From contig NC_043017.1 of the NCBI RefSeq assembly GCF_006345805.1, positions 27,838,001 to 27,902,000 on the forward strand: DNA of 64,000 nt, written 5' to 3'. Positions within the stretch are counted from its first letter, which is position 1; every line of letters starts with the position of its first letter. Made by a program: the position numbers and the translations under genes. This document shows positions 2,095 through 62,200 of this stretch, piece after piece. The notes under the pieces are model-generated. The model ran no database searches and was not told where the DNA came from. It was given only the letters and a program-made list of their open reading frames with translations. The stretch comes from Octopus sinensis. Lineage: Eukaryota.

Positions 2095-3170
2095 TATATA
2101 TATATATATGTATATATGTGTGTGTGTGTGTATCTATTTATATATAAATTTTTTCTGTGTCCTATGAAGATTAGCGTTTACCCTATCGTGATAGATATCA
2201 TCAATTTGCGTTAAAAATGAATTGTTACTTACGCCTAAATCGATTAAAAACTAGACATGGTTTCATTTTCGTTTCATTTACAATTACCATTTTGCAACCG
2301 TGCGTCAGTCCAAGTTATCTAAATGTACGTGAAAAGCTCAGGTAAAAATGTAAAGGCGTATAAATGATAGGAAACGAAATGTGCCTTCATCTGTATGCGT
2401 TCCATATTTTATAATTCCCGTTTTATAATCCCTTCATTAAGTAAAACACGAAGGGAGAGAAAGGGTAGGTAAGTTAACAGCGTAGGTAAGTTAACATCTT
2501 GGATGCCCTAATTGTGTACCTTTCTGTTATGAGTTCAAATCTGACTTTGACATTTTTCCTGTTATGCCCAGAGTGCCTAATTAGCTGTCAAGAATAGGCG
2601 TCGCTCAGTATTAAATATGCAAGTGGCAAACACAGAAGTCAGCATTTCAAAATATATCCCGGTCTTTCGCCATTATTTATATACAAACTCCTCTCTTCCG
2701 TTTTGCGATTACACGTCGTTCGTGTCAATAATTATGATGGCAACAGCAAGAATATAAAACAATAATAATATTATTATTATTAATAATAATAATAATAATT
2801 GAAAATTTGGTCTTCAATGATACGTCAAAACTTTGCGGGAGAAATGACATTCAACCGATAATAAAGACAACGGGAAACAAGTATTATTTATTTCACAAAA
2901 GAAAGAAGAATGGATGACACATAACGCAAAGGAACAGACGCAAATCATACCAAAGGTGGTATATGATTGAAGGATTCATTAATTTTGCGTTATATTTAGA
3001 GCTCATATACTGTCAAAATTCAGTTTTCTCTTATCATTGTGGGGTCAATAGTAGCTAATTGTTTGCCTCGGTGACATTTTGTGTGTCTTCCACCAGTTCA
3101 TTAAAGAAGAATATGATAAATGTACATTGATGCACCTATATTCATTCGTATGGTGCGTAGCAGTTTCAAT

Positions 3171-14560: not shown

Positions 14561-15842
14561 ATTAGAAAGGCACGTTTATTCTCTAGAAAAAGGAAAATGA
14601 GGCGGCATTGCTTCTATTGCCTTCGAATCTCCTAAGAATATGAGACAAAACGAGACAAAAGACCTTCAACAATGTGTGTGACTAAGAGGGAGAAAGTAAT
14701 TTCAATTCTCTAGTATTTTCCTTCCATACTTAATCTCACATTTTGACTTTTTTCTGAAGTCGCTCTTAAAACCAATGATTTTAGAAACACGAAAATCAAT
14801 CGAATATATATATGGTTAGTAAACAGCAGATGGGGAAATAGTGACGATAGAAGATGATATACGTTTTAAAGTTATAAATTTTATGGTCGTCTGCATATTC
14901 TGAATGGATACAAGTAAGGTCAACTAAAGTGGTACTTGATCTGTCAAGAGTGAATTTGAAAACAACTTACCATGAAGCATCTATAATATGCTGTACCTTT
15001 CTATAAAACTAATTTGGCAGTCTGAAAATATTGTGCAAAAAGCCAAATAGCCATTTATACATTATCTGTGAAATATCATTCATGTAACAATAAATGTAGA
15101 TGTTGTATTTATTTTTTAAAACATGTTTATTTTTGTTCGATTATCGATTGAAACATGAAACGAATACATAAAGGAATGTTTGGCAATGCAAAAACAATGA
15201 AATGACAGTGGAAATTGTGATAATATAAATTTTAACGAATCACCATTTGAACACTATGATAATCGCGAATGGTTTATTAGATTCAGCATAGGAAAAAAAT
15301 GCAGCTGACGCATTATAATAGCACGATACACACGCTGATACGCACGTACACACATGTTATTCTATGAAGAACTACAAGCAGAAACAATATCATATAATTC
15401 CTATAATTGTATATAAAAAAACTATATCTGATATGAATCAATGTTAGACATGAGAAAATTAAAATGAATAAAATAGGAAAATGTTCGTTTGATTAGATAT
15501 ATTAGTATTGGATAAATACAAAATCGCTCTTCGATCGGTTTTTTTTTTTGGACACTAGATTTGTTGAAATATTTCAATATATCGAACGATAGATTTTTAC
15601 GCTATAATGTTGAAAATTACTTTACAAAAGCTTATGTCTATTATATGCAGAAAAGTCGACGTACGTTTTCAATTTCTGTTTTGCTTCTTGATGTTGATAT
15701 TACTGCCCATTCTCAGTTCAAATCCAACCGAAGTCATTTTTTTTTCATTCTTTCGATGTCGGTAAAATAAAGTATCGATCCTATGCTGGGGCCGACTTTA
15801 TATGCCTAACATTGCTGGACTTATGCTAAAATGTTAAGCAAT

Positions 15843-16248
15843 AGGCGCAGGAGTGGCTGTGTGGTAAGTAGCTTGCTTACCAACCACATGGTTCCGGGTT
15901 CAGTCCCACTACATGGCACATTGGGCAAGTGTCTTCTGCTATAGCCCCGGGCCGACCAATGCTTTGTGAGTGGATTTGGTAGACGGAAACTGAAAGAAGC
16001 CTGTCGTATATGTGTATATGTATAATATGCGTGTGTGTTTGTGTGTCTGTGTTTGTCCCCCTAGCATTGCTTGACAACCGATAGTGGTAAGTTTATGTCC
16101 CCGTACTTAGCGGTTCGGCAAAAGAGACCAATAGAATAAGTACTGGGCTTACAAAGAATAAGTCCCGGGGGTCGATTTGCTCGACTAAAGGCGGTGCTCC
16201 AGCATGGCCGCAGTCAAATGACTGAAACAAGTAAAAGGGAGTAAAGAG
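15843..16248 (+). mobile_element. SINE-A, full length, little diverged
   Basis: Near-identical by eye to 3171-3631 apart from the short internal simple repeat. Confidence 0.92.
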
Positions 16249-17164
16249 ACTTATCATGGCATATTAATTGCACTATATTGATCGCTCATCCCACGCCAGG
16301 GTTATAAAGTGTTCCAGACGTATAAGAACTCCATTAACTAATCTGTCATTTTATATGACGGCATGTCGCGATTTGAGGAAATATTACTGCCAACATACGC
16401 ATTTCAAGTGGGAGCGTAAAAGCCTCGAGGTTAAATGTTCTGCAGAGTGATATATGAAATAGAAACCTCATTGATAGAAATATCAGATAGGTTTCATAAA
16501 ATGTGTTTGTGGTGTGAACTTAAAAACTATATTGCTTTGTGATAAACGATTTTTCCTCCCTTAATATCAAGAATATTTAACTTACCATTATTGTGACATT
16601 TGCCATAGCCTCTCAATAATCTTTACCATAATTCAATAACCCTTTACTTTGACCCCATATATTATTTGATCGATAAAGTAATTGGAGAAATTCTAACAAG
16701 TTATTTATTAAACAATTAGAAAATTTTCACTATCTTTGACCTTTAAACCTTGAGGGCATTTTCTCTCAAACGTATCGCCGGAAAATAGGCACTACGGATC
16801 AATATCCAGATTCGCTTCAACTTTGCACCTTTCACTGAAAGTCATACAAGTCATCGTATATCGCACTATTTAACTATTTCAGGCACATCAAACGTTATTA
16901 CTTTGTATCTTTAAAGAAATATCACGAACACATCAAACACTGATTAGACATATCCACAGACACAAGTACAATTTTATTTCTTTTGGTAAATGCATTATTA
17001 TAAACCAAGGCTTAATAACAATTTATTTTTACCGCAAATCAATTTTTTGTTCGTATCTCTACATTTCTGCATCAACTTATTAAAATTTCGAATCAAGAAT
17101 ATCATTATTTCTTTCCACATGCAAACGTATTATTCACCTCTGTGGTTCCCGAACATTATAAATA

Positions 17165-17542
17165 CTCTCTTTTACTCTTTTACATGTTTCAGTCATTTGA
17201 CTTCGGTCTTTAGTCGAGCAAATCGACCCCAGGACTTATTCTTTGTAAGCCCAGTACTTATTCTATCGGTCTCTTTTACCGAACCGCTAAGTGACGGGGA
17301 CGTGAACATACCAGCATCGGCTGTCAAGCAATGCTAGGGGGACAAACACAGACACACAAACACATACATATACACATACGACAGGCTTCTTTCAGTTTCC
17401 GTCTACCAAATCCACTCAGAAGGCATTGGTCGGCCCGGGGCTATAGCAGAAGACACTTGCCCAAGATGCCACGCAGTGGGACTGAACCCGGAACCATGTG
17501 GTTGGTAAGCAATCTACTTACCACACAGCCACTCCTGCGCCT
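17165..17542 (-). mobile_element. SINE-A, nearly full length, little diverged
   Basis: Reverse complement of the 15843 copy with a small deletion in the 3' tail. Confidence 0.92.
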
Positions 17543-22863: not shown

Positions 22864-23335
22864 GCATCCCTCTTCTTATTCACCATTCATTTATTATATG
22901 TTCTTTTAGTCATTTACCATTGTATTGGAATGGGTTTAAGGATGGTGGCCTCTTCAAAAACAAAAACAAAAAACAGTTACAGGCTGGTCATCATTGAAAG
23001 TCAATTTGCTTTCTTTCTCTCTTCCCTTTTTCCTTCTTTATTCCTTCGTTCTTTCTTTCTCCCCTCTTTGAGTTATATTTAGAATACAAAATGTACGGTT
23101 TCCCCTTCCAAACATATATATCCGTCTCAAATATCATGGAACCTCACCCCAAAAACTATAACTGAAAGAGAAGGCAAAGAAAGAAAAGGGGGAAAAAAGA
23201 AGGAAAAGGGGAAAAGAGAAAGAAAGCAAAATGAGTTTCAGTGATGACCAAACCTTAAGAGGTCACAACCCTAAACCCATTCCAATACAATGGTAAAGGA
23301 TTAAATAAATAAATGGTGAATAGGAAGGGGGATAC
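22864..23335. repeat. Imperfect foldback (arms about 200 bp, loop about 95 nt)
   Basis: ttattcaccatt..tttaccattgtattggaatgggttta..ggtcatcattgaaa..tttgctttctttctc on the left is mirrored by its reverse complement at 23165-23335. Confidence 0.8.
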
Positions 23336-24430: not shown

Positions 24431-25848
24431 TAGACATTCCTTTTTTCTGTTAAATATTAAAGAATCCAACAAGAGATGCAGTACGGAATTTTGTCAATAA
24501 ACAGGTCGCTGTGTTAAAGCGACGAAAATATTTTGACAAATTAAATTTAAATGTTGAAGTGAATCTAACGGATTTTTTGTGTTTCTTAAAAGGCTTATAA
24601 ACACCTTCCACGCTGCAATTGTTTTCGTTCCAGCACACGATCTGAGACCAGGTCACTTGCTATCCAAGTACATCTCCGTAATTAACCCATCCTTTTTCTC
24701 TTAAATATTCTCTCTCTATCTGCTTAGTCGAAGTCGACTCTCGGTCACTGGTTGGATCAGTGTCCTATTAGAATTCTTACACTTTTGATCCATAGAGTAT
24801 ATTGGCCAGGATACTGGGGTAGGTGGCCAGGTCTTTCCTCAGGCCAGAGCCGTTTAGCCAGCATACTTACCATATGCCGTTGCCACCCCCAGCACAAAGG
24901 TGAGGAGAACGGTTGGGCTTTGGAGGGGGCTCTTAAATATTAGACATTCTAAAATCTCTTTCTGTGAAACACACAAATGGGTATCAGAAATTTTACTTAA
25001 CTGGTGTATCAGTATTTCGAGTGGGTGACGGAATTTTCTATTTTCTCTCAACAATGCTAAAGAAATAATTGATTTTAAACTATCCTATTTCCTCAATCAT
25101 TATACATGTTAAATATTTAGTCTTCCGCCTTCAAGGGAATTAATTCATTGTTGTACTTTAAAAAACGATTCGGTTAAAGTTAATACATATATTCTCGTTC
25201 GCAGTCATGTTATCTTGAACTTAACATATATTTGAACCTCCGGTTCTATAAGCGTCTCATGACGAGAAGGGAAAAGAGAGAGTATTGTGCATTATTGACA
25301 TTTTAAAGATAACTAGAAAATCGATATTTATTATACAAGGAGTTTAAAACACCCCCTCCAATAAAAATCAATAAATATTGTTCAAGGAATAAGCAGCCAA
25401 AACATATATGTTTATTATGTGTGTAAAGTATTTCATTTTATTATAGCCTTGAAAAATAATAAATAACAAACTCCAAGTAAAGGAAAGCAGATAGAAAATT
25501 GATTTTCTATATGTAACTTTGTGCTAAAATGTCTGCTTTCTAGAGGAATCGAATATGCTTTATATTTTAAGTAAATGTCTTTGCATGAGACCCTGTAGCT
25601 TAGGTAAAGAAGATGAGGCATTGGTGCATTAAGAGTTCTCAATCTGTTCTTGATCAAGCAAGATGCGGTGTGTGCAACGTAATTTATGTAGGGAAAAAAA
25701 TGCATATATTGATCCGCCAAGAGGCATGTCAAGCGTTCACGAGGAAGAGAACGTATAAGTGATATTTTTGTTTAGAGTTTTGTATTTAGTTTGTGAATTT
25801 CAGCACACACACATATATGTATGCATATATGTATACATGTATACATGT

Positions 25849-35665: not shown

Positions 35666-35885
35666 GTGTGGTGTGTGTGTGTTTGTGTTTGTCCCCCTAG
35701 CATTGCTTGACAACCAATGCTGGTGTGTTTATGTCCCTGTCGCGTAGCGGCTCGGCAAAAGAGACCGATAGATTAAGTACTGGGCTAACAAAGAATAAGT
35801 CCTGGTGTCGAGTTGCTCGAATAAAGGTGGTGCTGCAGCATGGCCGCAGTCAAATGACTGAAACAAGTAAAAGAGTAAGAGTAGA
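35454..35885 (+). mobile_element. SINE-A, full length
   Basis: Head, internal TA/TG and tail present. Confidence 0.9.
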
Positions 35886-36239
35886 GTAGTTATAACATGA
35901 ACTAGGAAAGTAACAATAAGATATGTGGTGACTAAATACTAACATGACTATCTTAGTATTTATATAATCATTTTCATGACCTGTTTCACGCCTGTCACAA
36001 AACTGAGCAACGCTAATTTTGTAAAGAAATTTCCAAAACATCCTCTTCGTGAATGAACAGAAAACATATTGAATTAACACATCACAGCGTGCATTTCTGG
36101 CAATTCATAACTTTGAACTAAGATACACTTCGAACATTAACAGGGAAGGTTTGTATTAATAAACGTTTTGTTCATGAAATGAAAATGCTAAGGTGAAAAT
36201 AGATACATAAAAAGAAATCGTGGTTTCAGGAAAACTAGG

Positions 36240-36975
36240 AGGATGAGGATGTTGATGTTGATGATGGCGATGGTGGTGGTGACGATGATGATGGTGGTAG
36301 TGGTGACGATGATGATGATGGTGGTGGTGACGATGATGATGATGGTGGTGGTGATGACGATGGTGATGGTGGTGGTGACGATGATGATGATGGTGATTGT
36401 GACGACGATGGTGGTGGTGGTGACGATGGTGGTGGTGGTGGTGGTGACGATGGTGGTGGTGGTGGTGGTGACGATGGTGGTGGTGGTGGTGGTGACGACG
36501 ATGGTGGTGGTGGCGGTGGTGACGACGGCGATGATGGTGGTGGTGGTGGTGGTGACGACGATGATGGTGGTGACGGTGGTGACGACGACGATGACGACGA
36601 TGATGATGGTGATGGTGGTGGGGGTAACGATGATGATGGTGATGACGATGGTGATGGTGGTGGTGGCGACGACGATGATGATAATGGTGGTGGTGACGAT
36701 GATGATGATGGTGATGGTGGTGACGACGATGATAATGGTGGTGGTGACGATGATGATGATGGTGGTGGTGGTGACGATGGTGATGGTGGTGGTGGTGACG
36801 ATGGTGATGGTGGTGGTGGTGACGACGACGGTGATGGTGGTGGTCGTGACCATGACGATGATGATAGTGGTGGTGACAACGATGTTGATGGTGGTGGTGG
36901 TGACGATGATGATGGTGGTGGCGACGATGACGATGATGATGATGGTGGTGGTGGTGGTTGTGGTGACGATGATAC
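36240..36975. repeat. Cryptic trinucleotide repeat (GGT/GAT/GAC)n
   Basis: About 740 bp of in-phase GRY-type triplets; the long poly-V/M, poly-T/I and poly-P/S ORFs are artefacts of it. Confidence 0.95.
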
Positions 36976-37241
36976 TGATTATGTTTGTGAGACGCTTGCG
37001 ACTTTGATCTTTATGTCGATGTATATAAATGATGAAGAGACACGGTAGACATTTCCCCCCCCGCCAACATCATAATTATCATTATGTTGATCGTTTTGAA
37101 GATATAACATAACGATAATAATATGTTATCTAGTCATTTTATTACCTTCATTGTCTATGTAACCAATATCTCTCTTATTGTCATTATCACCAACGTAATA
37201 TAATGTGATTAATACATATCATTTAGAATTTTTAATTAAAG

Positions 37242-37275
37242 TTTCTTTTTTTTTTCCTTCTCTTTGCAGGTGAGT
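37242..37275 (+). other. Candidate recursive splice site (polypyrimidine tract-CAG|GTGAGT)
   Basis: 24 consecutive pyrimidines (37242-37265), GCAG ending at 37269, then GTGAGT. Confidence 0.5.
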
Positions 37276-37786
37276 CTCATTTTCATTCTTTTCAAAATGA
37301 AGAAATCGACTGCAAACACAACTTTTATTTTCCTATTCTCTTTGGACCTGTTGCATAACATTTTCATATCGCATATGGCTGTTGTGGTAATGTATATACT
37401 TTTAGTAAAATGGTTTCTGATAAAGTTATATGTATATCTGTATGAATTTCTATCTATCTATATATCGATATATCTATCTATCTATCTATCTATGTCCATA
37501 TGCCTGCCTATCTATCTGTTTGTCTGTTTTTCTATCTATCTATACACATATACATACATGTGTGTGCGCGTGTTTGCGTATAAATGTGCGCGTGTGAGTA
37601 TGTTTGCGTGTATGCGCGTGTACATTTCTGTATGTGCATAGATTTTCTGTGGTAGTCAGGATTTGAATACGGACTTCGGCCTTTAGAAGGATTCACAGAA
37701 AGGTACATAGAATGAAACAAGGAGAGAAAATAATGTGTAATTGCTAGTGATCTATCATATGTATATATATGTGTGGTGTATATATC

Positions 37787-40681: not shown

Positions 40682-40706
40682 TCGTTTTATTTGCCTACAG
40701 GTAAGT
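40682..40706 (+). other. Second candidate recursive site, or donor of a non-coding exon (TACAG|GTAAGT)
   Basis: tcgttttatttgcctacag|gtaagt; the possible upstream exon 40623-40700 has stops in all three frames. Confidence 0.35.
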
Positions 40707-53969: not shown

Positions 53970-54356
53970 TACTCTTTTACTCTTTTACTTGTTTTAGTCA
54001 TTTGACTGCGGTAATGCTGGAGCACCGCCTTTAGTCGAGCAAATCGACCCCGGGACTAATTCTTTGTAAGCCCAGTACTTATTCTATCGGTCTCTTTTGC
54101 CGAACCGCTAAGTGACGGGGACGTAAACACACCAGCATTGGTTGTCAAGCAATGCTAGGGGGATAAACACAGACACGCAAACACACACATACATATATAC
54201 GACAGACTTCTTTCAGTTTCCGTCTATCAAATCCACTCACAAGGCATTGGTCGGCCCGGGGCTATAGCAGAAGACACTTGCCCAAGATGCCACGCAGTGG
54301 GACTGAACCCGGAACCATGTGGCTGGTTAGCAAGCTACTTACCACACAGCCACTCC
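53970..54356 (-). mobile_element. SINE-A, full length, little diverged
   Basis: Reverse complement of the 15843 type with only about 20 bp of internal repeat. Confidence 0.92.
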
Positions 54357-59221: not shown

Positions 59222-62200
59222 CATATATTATATTCTTTTATTCATATATATATATATATTTATTATTCATTATTTATATATATAGTTATATATATATATA
59301 TATGTTTATTTATATATATATTTATATATATATATATAATTTTATTTATATTATTTATATATATATATATATATATATATTTATTCATTTATTTATATAT
59401 ATATATGTTTATTTATATATATATATATGTTTATTTATATATATATATATGTTTATTATTTATATATATATATAATTATTTTTTATATATATATAATATG
59501 TTTATTTATATATATATTTATGTTTATTTATATAATATATATATTCATTTATATTATATATATATGTTTATATTATATATATATATATATATAATATGTT
59601 TATGTAATAATATATTATATATTATTATATATATATTTTATATAATAATATATTCCTTTATTTATAATATATATTCATTATTTATATATATTATTCATTT
59701 ATTTATATATATATATATTCATTTATTTCTGTATATATATCTATTCATTATTTATTTATATGTATATATTCATTTATTTATATATATATATCACATTTAT
59801 TTATATCTATATATATTCATTTATTTATAGATATATATTCATTTATTTATATATATATATATTCATTTATTTATATTATATATATATATTCATTCATTTA
59901 TATATATATATATTCATTCATTTATTTTTATATATATATTCATTTATTTATATATATATATATTCATTTATTTATATATATATATATATTCATTTATTTA
60001 TATATAATATGTATATGATTTTGATTTATTTGATTTTTGATTTCGTTTCAGCTCATGAGCTGTGGCCATGCTGGGGCACCGCCATTTGTTTGCTACATGA
60101 TTTTACCTCACGAAGCTTTTTAGCAACTGCCATTTGGTGCGGAGAGTTCGATGCAGCTGCCCTCATCTGCACCTCCTGCCGTGAAGTTGGTTCATCCGGG
60201 ACACCTGACAGGAAGAGATCCAGTCCTACTTTAAAGACATCCGCATCTACACCATGCAGGTCCCTCAGGTTCTTCGGGAGATATTGAAGAGCTGTGGGCC
60301 TCTGAACCCCAGACTATCACAGTATCTTGTCCTACATCTTGATGGCAAATTCGGAGTCCTTGGTACCACGCAGTGGCGCCCGGTTCTGGCATTTGTGTGA
60401 CTCCCGATGCCAAAGTTTGGGACAAGTCCTTCCAGGATCTTCCAGATAAATATTATGGCATATCTTTCTCGCCTACGCTCCAAGGAATAGAGTTTTAATC
60501 TCTTGAGTCTTTCCCAGTAGCTTATATGCTGCACAGAGGCTATCTTCTTCGTGTAGCTTCGTTGGATCGCCTCAAATTCTGTGATCAACTTGACACTGGA
60601 TGGTGACCATAGCTGAGAGCAATAGTCAAAGTGGCTTAGGACAAGTGTCTTCCAGAGGACCATCATGGTTTCTTTTTTGTCTTGTTCTAAAGGTTCTAAG
60701 AATCCATCTGGCCAGCCGTCTACATTTCATTGCCAGTTTAGCAACATGTACATGAAAGGTCGCGTCATCACTCATGTGAATACCCAGGTCACGCACTGAT
60801 TGTGCCTCTGGGATTGCAATCCCTCCGGGTCCAGTGTATTCATTGGGTATTGCATTCAGTTTTGCATACTGATAGCATAAAGCTTGAAACTTTTCAGCAT
60901 TGAACTGCATGCTATTTTTTTCAGCCCACTTGTATATTTTGTCCAGCTCACATTGCAGGTGCTTAGTGTTTTCAGGGTTCTGTATTGCCTGTGAAACTTT
61001 TGTATCATCTGCATAACTTGTGATCGTGGATCTCTGTGTGGCTGAGGGCATGTCTGAAAGGGCCATTATGAACAGTAGTGGTCCCAAAACATTGCCCTGC
61101 GGAACACCGCTCACTATTTGCGTGTTAATGGCTACTACCACCTGACTTCTATTCTTCAGAAAGTCATGAAGCCATTCTCCCGATTTTCCAACTACGCCAA
61201 GATCACGCAGTTTGTGACATATCATTCCATGATCGACTTTATCAAAGGCCTTTGCAAAGTCGAGATATATCACTTCCACATTGTGTGGATGAGCAGTCGT
61301 TTCAGCACCCAGTCCCAGTCAGTGTTGTAGGAGCTGAGTTAAGCAGCTTCTTCCTAGTCGGAAACCATGTTGGGTGTCAGGCAGCAAGTCATTTTCTTCA
61401 AGGAAGGTGATTAGTTTCCTTCTGACAATTCGTTCCATGACCTTGCTGATGTGTGAGGTCAGAGAGATAGGTCTGTAGTTCTTGGCCTCCGTTCTGCTAC
61501 CTCCTTATGAATAGGGCATATTTTACCCTTCCTTCAGTTTTCTTGGAGTTTGCCAGTTGCAAAAGCTCTGAAAGAGAGACTGCAGTGGTCTTGCTAGGAC
61601 TCTCTTACATACTTTTAGAAGGATTGCCGGGAATCCATCGGGGCCGTAGCTGAGTTTGTTTCATCTCATCTATAGCCTTTATTGCATCGTCTTCCTTATA
61701 TTGATATATATATTCATTATTTATATATATATATATATATCGTATATATATATATATATATATATTCATTTATATTATATATATATATATATATATGTAT
61801 ATATGATATATTCATTTACATATATAATATATTCATTTATATATATATATATTCATTTATATATATATATATATATATATATCTATATATATATATTCAT
61901 TCATTTATATATATATATATATTCATTCATTTATATATATATATATTCATTCATTTCTATATATATATATATATATATTCATTCATTTATATATATATAT
62001 ATATTCATTCATTTATATATATATATATATATATTCATTCATTTATATATATATATATATTCATTCATTTATATATATATATATATATATTCATTCATTT
62101 ATATATATATATTAATTCATTCATTTATATATATATATATATATTCATTCATTTATATATATATATATTCATTTATTTTATATAGATATTATTATATTAT

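What the first reader, a model, noticed from the sequence alone, without database searches (positions are those of the whole stretch)
37225..37275. Zero-length-exon (recursive splicing) signature in a repeat-filled intron-like region
Seen: a TTAAT branch-point-like motif, no AG between 37242 and 37267, 24 straight pyrimidines, then CAG immediately followed by a perfect donor GTGAGT and T-rich intron-like sequence. Known: AG|GTRAGT junctions define Drosophila ratchet points and vertebrate RS-exons in long introns. Inference: this may be a recursive splice point in a long cephalopod intron. I am not aware of this being described in molluscs, but I cannot check the literature. A CAG|GTRAGT 9-mer alone could occur by chance in 64 kb; its pairing with the long pyrimidine tract is what stands out.
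Basis: partly seen in the sequence, partly recalled or inferred. Interest (0 to 1): 0.72.

Follow-up and report, generated by a model that had tools for sequence, protein, structure and literature searches.

The report
Candidate recursive splice site, unverified
A near-perfect back-to-back "end of intron / start of intron" signal really sits at 37269|37270 and is rarer than chance predicts for one window, but nothing available here shows that this strand is transcribed, so it is a good candidate recursive splice site in an octopus-like genome and not a demonstrated one.

Summary
TTAAT is at 37232-36. There is no AG in 37242-37267. Twenty-four straight pyrimidines run 37242-65, followed by GCAG|GTGAGT with the junction at 37269|37270.

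With a generic splice-site matrix, this one position carries both the best acceptor and the best donor of the whole window on either strand. None of 900 composition-matched simulated windows reached it. I expect about 1e-4 to 7e-4 such sites per 64-kb window, or roughly 5-30 in a 2.8-Gb genome.

Gene context could not be obtained. No coding exon, RNA family or tRNA was found in the 64 kb, no orthologous DNA was reachable, and strand skews are inconclusive. The only confirmed protein homology is a LINE reverse-transcriptase fragment whose best named relative is from Octopus.

The held literature has no report of recursive splicing in octopus or molluscs. It does report sense-strand enrichment of such sites in long introns of every invertebrate tested.

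My estimates: true recursive site about 0.4, chance motif in DNA not transcribed in this sense about 0.37, ordinary acceptor of an unannotated exon about 0.12.

The parts
37232..37236 (+). Branch-point-like TTAAT (yUnAy; candidate branch A at 37235, 34 nt from the 3' splice AG)
   Evidence: The distance is within the usual 18-40 nt range (established knowledge). The AG at 37240-41 is only 5 nt downstream of that A, too close to be chosen under the scanning model (established knowledge, not tested here).
37242..37265 (+). Polypyrimidine tract, 24 of 24 C/T, including a run of 10 T; part of the AG-free zone 37242-37267
   Evidence: It is one of only two YAG sites in the window, counting both strands, with at least 22 of 24 upstream pyrimidines.
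37266..37269 (+). 3' splice-site core GCAG, with T at -5 and -6
   Evidence: Best acceptor score of the window at 17.0 bits. TT at -5/-6 is found in 196 of 197 fly ratchet points.
37270..37275 (+). 5' splice-site core GTGAGT immediately after the AG; CAG|GTGAGT matches MAG|GTRAGT 9 of 9
   Evidence: Best donor score of the window at 13.6 bits; one of 3 perfect 9-mers among 7,504 GTs.
37270..37386 (+). Putative cryptic RS-exon (117 nt) that would let the site be recognised by exon definition; open in one frame, stops in the other two
   Evidence: Inferred by analogy with fly and vertebrate RS-exons. No protein homolog.
37299..37304 (+). GAAGAA, a purine-rich enhancer-like hexamer 30 nt into the putative RS-exon
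   Evidence: About a 4% chance of occurring in 117 nt at this composition (my arithmetic), so weak evidence.
37387..37392 (+). Weak downstream donor GTG|GTAATG (5.4 bits) that could close the RS-exon
   Evidence: Much weaker than the ratchet donor (13.6), as the competition model requires.
37594..37599 (+). Alternative downstream donor CGT|GTGAGT (8.1 bits), giving a 324-nt exon
40698..40706 (+). Second, weaker composite site CAG|GTAAGT (junction 40700|40701) on the same strand, 3.4 kb downstream; moderate pyrimidine tract, CT rather than TT at -6/-5
   Evidence: Acceptor 10.4, donor 13.0. Sites of this grade are expected 0.1-0.55 times per window by chance, so it is not significant alone.

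Best explanation
The site is a ratchet point: a composite 3'/5' splice site inside a long + strand intron.

Proposed mechanism (inferred by analogy, not shown here):
1. U2AF binds the 24-nt pyrimidine tract and the CAG. U2 pairs at the TTAAT branch site near 37235.
2. The site is first recognised as the acceptor of a short cryptic exon (37270-37386, or up to 37593), closed by a weak downstream donor.
3. The upstream exon is ligated to 37270. This rebuilds a strong donor (xAG|GTGAGT).
4. The rebuilt donor outcompetes the weak downstream donor. The rest of the intron is then removed from 37270 onward and no nucleotide is left in the mRNA.

Shown: the sequence signals and their rarity. Inferred: transcription of the + strand, the intron context, and the two-step use.
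For: - Consensus (Y)nNCAG|GTRAGT is met exactly (consensus).
- The site is the best acceptor and the best donor of the whole window on either strand. Model-free counts agree.
- 0 of 900 simulated windows reach it. Expected 1e-4 to 7e-4 per window.
- TT at -5/-6 and an unusually prominent pyrimidine tract are hallmarks of fly ratchet points.
- The ratchet donor (13.6 bits) is far stronger than the downstream donors (5.4 and 8.1), as the donor-competition model needs.
- The 440 bp around the site are single-copy within the window, so within this window the motif is not carried by a repeat.
- No coding exon was detected in 64 kb, which is compatible with a very long intron.
- All five invertebrates tested by Shepard et al. 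show 4- to more than 20-fold sense-strand enrichment of such sites in introns over 50 kb: sea urchin, fly, mosquito, bee and beetle. By phylogenetic bracketing a mollusc may share this.
- The second-best composite site of the window is on the same strand.
Against: - There is no evidence at all that the + strand is transcribed or that the window lies in a gene.
- No exon was found, which equally fits intergenic DNA.
- Strand skews are near zero (T-A +0.018, G-C +0.010).
- Conservation could not be examined.
- There is no downstream donor at about 50 nt as in fly RS-exons. The nearest is weak and at 117 nt.
- The core is GTGAGT rather than the fly-preferred GTAAGT.
- 5-30 equally good sites are expected by chance genome-wide.
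- Vertebrates, whose genes are as expanded as cephalopod genes, show no enrichment of such sites.
- The splice matrices were generic and written from my own knowledge, not trained on octopus.
Confidence: 0.4

Rival explanations
1. Chance juxtaposition with no function. A T/C-rich low-complexity tract happens to be followed by CAGGTGAGT in intergenic DNA, or in an intron of a gene on the - strand, so the spliceosome never sees it.
For: - The window is about 35% repeats and low-complexity sequence, with 19 pyrimidine runs of at least 18 nt.
- No exon, RNA family, tRNA or protein homology apart from a LINE fragment.
- Skews give no sign of + strand transcription.
- 5-30 such sites are expected per genome by chance. 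A first-stage scan that reads many windows will surface them.
- An equally pyrimidine-rich acceptor-like site exists on the - strand at 23161 with no donor attached.
Against: - The per-window expectation is only 1e-4 to 7e-4.
- The extra ratchet-point traits (TT at -5/-6, no AG in the tract, branch-like motif at 34 nt, weak downstream donors) are all present.
- Invertebrate long introns are enriched for exactly this motif.
Confidence: 0.37
2. Ordinary 3' splice site of an unannotated exon: a 5'-UTR exon, a non-coding exon, or a cassette or poison exon covering 37270-37386 or 37270-37593. The exon merely happens to begin with GTGAGT. It would be retained in at least some transcripts. In vertebrate terms this is an expressed RS-exon.
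For: - A very strong acceptor.
- A downstream donor at 117 nt, which is a multiple of 3 and open in one frame with an ATG at 37297 in an A-at-minus-3 context, and another at 324 nt.
- GAAGAA enhancer-like motif.
- Mammals may have more than 6,400 expressed exons that start with a donor-like sequence.
Against: - The ORF across the exon has no relative among 5.8 billion proteins, including transcript-derived ones, and no Pfam match.
- The downstream donors are weak next to the donor at 37270. By the competition rule the exon should be skipped.
- The exon is AT-rich (32% GC).
Confidence: 0.12
3. Donor only. CAG|GTGAGT is the 5' splice site of a T-rich first or non-coding exon that ends at 37269, and the pyrimidine tract is exonic.
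For: The donor is the best in the window.
Against: - No acceptor above 6 bits in 35749-37269 and no promoter evidence sought or found. The upstream sequence is a 700-bp triplet minisatellite followed by AT-rich sequence with stops.
- This reading leaves the perfect acceptor architecture unexplained.
Confidence: 0.04
4. Origin by retroposition. The pyrimidine tract is the reverse complement of a degenerate A-rich tail of an element inserted on the - strand, as in antisense-Alu exonisation. This is a statement about origin and is compatible with any of the readings above.
For: On the - strand the tract reads AAAGAGAAGGAAAAAAAAAAGAAA and follows a unique 170-bp segment. An AATAAA lies 58 nt upstream of it on that strand (read by eye).
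Against: - No target-site duplication within 2 kb.
- No second copy of the flanking 440 bp in the window, although the window holds 19 copies or fragments of another SINE.
- The AATAAA is too far from the tail for a normal poly(A) site.
Confidence: 0.05

Closest known systems
Drosophila intronic ratchet points (zero-nucleotide exons; Ubx, kuz, Bx, osp, fz and more than 500 others)
   Same: - Juxtaposed acceptor and donor with consensus (Y)nNCAG|GTRAGT.
- A more prominent pyrimidine tract than ordinary acceptors.
- TT at -5/-6.
- A ratchet donor stronger than the donor of the cryptic downstream exon.
   Different: - Fly sites are proven by junction reads, lariats and saw-tooth coverage, and are ultraconserved. 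None of that is available here.
- Fly cryptic exons are about 50 nt; here the nearest donor is at 117 nt and weak.
- The core is GTGAGT, not GTAAGT.
- The host would be a mollusc with a 2.8-Gb, SINE-filled genome.
RP-sites enriched in long introns of other invertebrates (sea urchin, mosquito, bee, beetle; Shepard et al. 2009)
   Same: A purely sequence-defined composite site in a region with no exons for tens of kb. Background density in that study is about 0.1 per 100 kb per strand, in line with finding none or one per window.
   Different: That evidence is a genome-wide sense/antisense ratio. Here there is one site and the sense strand is unknown. No mollusc was in that study.
Vertebrate recursive splice sites and RS-exons (Sibley et al. 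2015; Blazquez et al. 2018)
   Same: A YAG|GT site recognised through a downstream RS-exon, with the outcome set by competition between the rebuilt donor and the RS-exon donor. Cephalopod genes are expanded to vertebrate-like sizes.
   Different: - Vertebrate long introns show no enrichment of the motif, and only about nine fully suppressed intronic sites were noted definitively.
- Vertebrate RS-exons usually carry premature stops. Here one frame of the 117-nt exon is open.
Zero-length exon / pseudo-exon (Grellscheid and Smith 2006)
   Same: An intronic acceptor directly followed by a donor that can behave either as a skipped zero-length exon or as a poison exon.
   Different: That case was shown by minigene experiments in a short mammalian intron and is not thought to serve long-intron removal.

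Membership tests
Intronic ratchet point (fly/invertebrate type) | [quoted passage not shown] | tested here: met
   tttcttttttttttccttctctttGCAG|GTGAGT. Top acceptor and top donor of the window. 9 of 9 donor match.
Intronic ratchet point (fly/invertebrate type) | Pyrimidine tract more prominent than ordinary acceptors; TT at -5/-6 (196 of 197 fly sites) | tested here: met
   24 of 24 pyrimidines, with T at 37264 and 37265 (-6 and -5). No octopus acceptor set was available for comparison.
Intronic ratchet point (fly/invertebrate type) | Lies deep in a long intron, on the sense strand of the host gene | not testable with these tools
   No annotation or transcript data were reachable. No exon was detected in 64 kb. 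Five exact-protein look-ups and two DNA scans found nothing. Skews are inconclusive.
Intronic ratchet point (fly/invertebrate type) | Short cryptic RS-exon (about 50 nt in flies) closed by a donor weaker than the ratchet donor | tested here: inconclusive
   The ratchet donor at 13.6 bits is far stronger than the downstream donors (5.4 at +117 nt, 8.1 at +324 nt). There is no donor near +50 nt (rule).
Intronic ratchet point (fly/invertebrate type) | Core motif strongly conserved among related species while flanks are not | not testable with these tools
   No cephalopod genome collection was available. The ORF-based search for related contigs returned nothing.
Intronic ratchet point (fly/invertebrate type) | RNA evidence: junction reads into the site, lariats from the site, saw-tooth nascent RNA | not testable with these tools
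Vertebrate RS-exon | RS-exon inclusion introduces a premature stop or frameshift | tested here: inconclusive
   The 117-nt exon preserves frame. One frame is open and two have stops. The host reading frame is unknown.
Conventional coding exon | Open frame with recognisable protein relatives | tested here: not met
   No hit at E <= 1 among 5.8 billion proteins. Only a sub-threshold Pfam DUF match, E 0.024 and 15 bits against a cut-off of 27.
Antisense retroposon tail (Alu-exonisation-like origin) | Flanking target-site duplication and other copies of the element | tested here: not met
   No direct repeat flanking the segment within 2.3 kb. 36990-37450 is single-copy in the window. A genome-wide copy number was not testable.

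The most novel reading that the evidence does not exclude
Octopus removes very long introns stepwise at zero-length-exon ratchet points, as insects do and as the sea-urchin motif enrichment suggests. This would be the first lophotrochozoan example. It would imply that ratchet-point recursive splicing is ancestral to bilaterians, and that it was kept in a lineage whose neuronal genes independently grew to vertebrate size, whereas vertebrates largely lost it.
Probability: 0.3. Interest if true: 0.6.

Novelty: new member of a known kind. Interest (0 to 1): 0.35.

Why it matters
Cephalopods expanded their genes and introns to vertebrate-like sizes independently. How their spliceosome handles introns of tens to hundreds of kb is not addressed in the literature I could search.

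If sites like this are used, recursive splicing would be documented in the third great bilaterian branch. The contrast between enrichment in invertebrates and no enrichment in vertebrates could then be tested in an invertebrate with vertebrate-sized introns.

A single unverified motif does not establish this. Its value is as a precise, testable coordinate, and as a prompt for a genome-wide sense/antisense count.

Tried and rejected
1. Coding exon at the site. The ORF 37264-37449 has no protein relatives and no Pfam family, so this was rejected as unsupported.
2. Repeat-borne motif. A self-BLAST of 36990-37450 finds no second copy in the window, and no flanking direct repeat was found.
3. Gene context from exact-protein look-ups of five window ORFs. 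None is on record.
4. Gene context from a composite of the 40 GC-richer, non-repeat ORFs of at least 50 aa on both strands. There was no hit at E <= 1e-3. The control search with the LINE RT gave 1,329 hits including an Octopus RefSeq protein, so the database does hold some octopus proteins. Short exons would still be missed.
5. Splice-flanked open exon candidates. Only 8 were found. The best is a 50%-GC island at 24728-24899 (+) with a 12-bit donor, and it has no homolog.
6. Orthologous or allelic DNA from two exact-pattern scans of metagenome contigs. Nothing was found.
7. Rfam and tRNA scans of the window found nothing.
8. Strand asymmetry of unmasked sequence as a proxy for transcription. 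T-A skew is +0.018 and G-C skew is +0.010, which is too small and uneven to use.
9. Orientation of transposable elements. There are 12 + and 7 - SINE copies, and only one confirmed protein-coding element, a LINE RT on the - strand. This is uninformative.
10. The other AGGTRAGT sites. 2467 and 2484 are a tandem duplicate, GTAGGTAAGTTAACA, with no pyrimidine tract. 40701 is only moderate.
11. I did not attempt a genome-wide enrichment test, because the tools give no cephalopod genome.

Full report
**What is in the sequence.** On the + strand, 37230-37275 reads ttttaattaaag tttcttttttttttccttctcttt gcag|gtgagt.
- TTAAT is at 37232-36.
- 37242-37265 is an unbroken run of 24 pyrimidines.
- There is no AG between 37242 and 37267.
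- The AG is 37268-69 and GTGAGT is 37270-75.
- If A37235 were the branch point it would sit 34 nt from the AG. The only intervening AG (37240-41) is 5 nt downstream of that A, too close to be selected under the usual scanning model (established knowledge, not tested here).

**Is it more than chance?**
- The 8-mer AGGTRAGT alone is not unusual. It occurs 4 times on + and 2 times on -, about what composition predicts.
- The pairing with the tract is unusual. With a generic donor matrix (-3..+6) and acceptor matrix (-20..+1) written from textbook consensus, position 37270 holds the best acceptor of the window on either strand (17.0 bits; next best 13.4). It also holds the best donor (13.6 bits).
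- A model-free count agrees. Only 2 of 2,702 YAG sites have at least 22 of 24 upstream pyrimidines without an AG, and only 3 of 7,504 GTs match MAG|GTRAGT at 9 of 9 positions.
- In 300 simulated 64-kb windows at each of Markov orders 1, 3 and 5, trained on the window itself, none reached the observed pair of scores.
- Splitting the estimate, acceptors this strong arise 0.19-0.65 times per window (both strands), which matches the real count. GTRAGT follows an AG with probability 0.0006-0.001.
- The expectation is therefore about 1e-4 to 7e-4 per window. For a 2.8-Gb octopus genome (size) that is still 5-30 sites by chance. The motif is significant for one window but not self-proving for a genome-wide scan.

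**Surroundings.**
- The window is AT-rich (about 33% GC), and about 35% of it is interspersed repeat or low-complexity sequence.
- It holds 19 copies or fragments of one SINE of about 400 bp, 12 in one orientation and 7 in the other, and many microsatellites.
- A frameshifted LINE reverse-transcriptase fragment lies at about 60.3-61.5 kb on the - strand (Pfam RVT_1). Its best named relative is a RefSeq 'jockey-like' protein from Octopus at 61% identity.
- The site sits in a 440-bp stretch that is single-copy within the window. A 700-bp (GAT/GGT)n minisatellite (36259-36956) lies upstream, and TCTA and TA microsatellites lie downstream.
- No flanking target-site duplication was found. I could not support the idea that the pyrimidine tract is the antisense A-tail of a retroposon, although the - strand does read as an A-rich tail.

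**Comparison with what defines known recursive sites.**
- Fly ratchet points have the consensus (Y)nNCAG|GTAAGT.
- They are recognised through a short cryptic exon whose donor is weaker than the rebuilt ratchet donor, so that the cryptic exon is always skipped.
- Here the consensus, the strong tract and TT at -5/-6 are all present.
- Downstream donors exist but are weak: GTG|GTAATG at 37387 (5.4 bits, 117-nt exon) and CGT|GTGAGT at 37594 (8.1 bits, 324-nt exon), against 13.6 bits at 37270. The strength relation fits. The distance does not match the fly figure of about 50 nt.
- A GAAGAA hexamer lies 30 nt into the putative exon. That is weak evidence, with about a 4% chance of occurring.
- The second-best composite AG|GT of the window, CAG|GTAAGT at 40700|40701, is on the same strand. 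It is of a grade expected 0.1-0.55 times per window by chance and lacks TT at -5/-6.

**What could not be established.** The decisive point is whether the + strand is transcribed as part of a long intron, and it is out of reach with these tools.
- Exact-product look-ups of five window ORFs found nothing.
- The ORF across the site has no relative among 5.8 billion proteins and no Pfam family.
- A composite of the 40 GC-richer non-repeat ORFs from both strands also had no hit. The RT control search returned 1,329 hits.
- So no coding exon of at least 50 codons is detectable in 64 kb. That fits a very long intron and intergenic DNA equally well.
- Rfam and tRNA scans were empty.
- Two pattern scans of metagenome contigs found no related DNA, so conservation could not be examined.
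- Strand skews of unmasked sequence are small (T-A +0.018, G-C +0.010) and uneven along the window.

**Literature.**
- No held paper contains both 'recursive splicing' and 'octopus'. The two that contain 'recursive splicing' and 'mollus*' each hold one occurrence of each term and none in title or abstract. None joins recursive splicing with cephalopods.
- Shepard et al. 2009 counted composite sites in introns over 50 kb against their complementary strands. Every invertebrate tested was enriched on the sense strand: sea urchin 8.2x, fruit fly 21.7x, mosquito much greater than 10x, bee 4.0x, beetle 8.0x. Eight vertebrates were not (0.9-1.5x). Background was near 0.1 site per 100 kb. No mollusc was included.
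- By phylogenetic bracketing a lophotrochozoan might share the invertebrate pattern. Against that, cephalopod genes have expanded to vertebrate-like sizes, the condition under which vertebrates show no enrichment.

**Weighing.**
- I take a prior of about 0.2 that a given strand position lies in a sense intron. This follows from introns and intergenic DNA being about 1:1 and two possible strands.
- I take about even odds that octopus has invertebrate-like enrichment, with tenfold or greater enrichment for consensus-perfect sites if it does.
- These give roughly 0.4 for a truly used recursive site, 0.37 for a chance motif in DNA not transcribed in this sense, 0.12 for the ordinary acceptor of an unannotated exon that happens to start with GTGAGT, and small remainders for the donor-only reading.
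- These numbers are inference from priors and not measurements. They would move sharply with a single look at the annotation or at stranded RNA-seq.

**Verdict.**
- If real, it is a new member of a known kind, a ratchet point in a phylum where none has been reported. It would not be a new mechanism.
- Interest is moderate to low until RNA or conservation evidence is added.

Noticed in passing
window 514-54356, e.g. 15839-16249 (+), 17166-17542 (-), 53976-54356 (-): One SINE family of about 400 bp is present as 19 copies or fragments (72-90% identical; 12 +, 7 -). Copies in the orientation of the reference copy carry GGTAAGT donor-like strings. Copies in the opposite orientation carry an acceptor-like ttttacttgtttcag|TCATTTGA. 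The family therefore seeds many decoy splice signals.
   Followed up: partly
window 36259-36956: A 700-bp minisatellite of triplets (GAT/GGT/GAC; periods 24 and 27) lies just upstream of the site. It is open in two + frames (Asp/Gly-rich and Met/Val/Thr-rich) and in - frames (Ser/Pro-rich, Thr/Ile/Val-rich). The exact products of the + Met/Val/Thr-rich ORF (36243-37007) and the - Thr/Ile/Val-rich ORF (36188-36853) are not on record. Whether any frame is coding is unknown.
   Followed up: partly
window 60268-61504 (-): A LINE reverse-transcriptase fragment (Pfam RVT_1) is split over at least three overlapping or adjacent frames, so it is a decayed copy. Its best named relative is an Octopus 'jockey-like' RefSeq protein at 61% identity. 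The best hit overall is 75% identical, on a 796-bp ENA contig.
   Followed up: yes
window 23161-23226 (-): A 51-nt pyrimidine run is followed by gccttctctttcag|TTATAG. This is the only other acceptor-like site in the window as pyrimidine-rich as the finding, and it has no donor attached.
   Followed up: no
window 24700-24960: A 50%-GC island sits in AT-rich surroundings. It has a strong + strand donor (AAG|GTGAGG at 24900) behind a 172-nt open frame, and on the - strand an ATG|GTAAGT donor near 24870. There is no protein or Pfam match. It could be a non-coding exon or an old repeat.
   Followed up: partly
window 2464-2493: A tandem duplicate, GTAGGTAAGTTAACA x2, accounts for two of the four + strand AGGTRAGT matches. 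There is no pyrimidine tract upstream.
   Followed up: yes
window 40698-40706 (+): The second-best composite site is CAG|GTAAGT, with a moderate pyrimidine tract, on the same strand 3.4 kb downstream of the finding.
   Followed up: partly
window 37066-37127: An imperfect inverted repeat of about 62 nt (75% self-complementary) lies 140 nt upstream of the site. Its significance is unknown.
   Followed up: no
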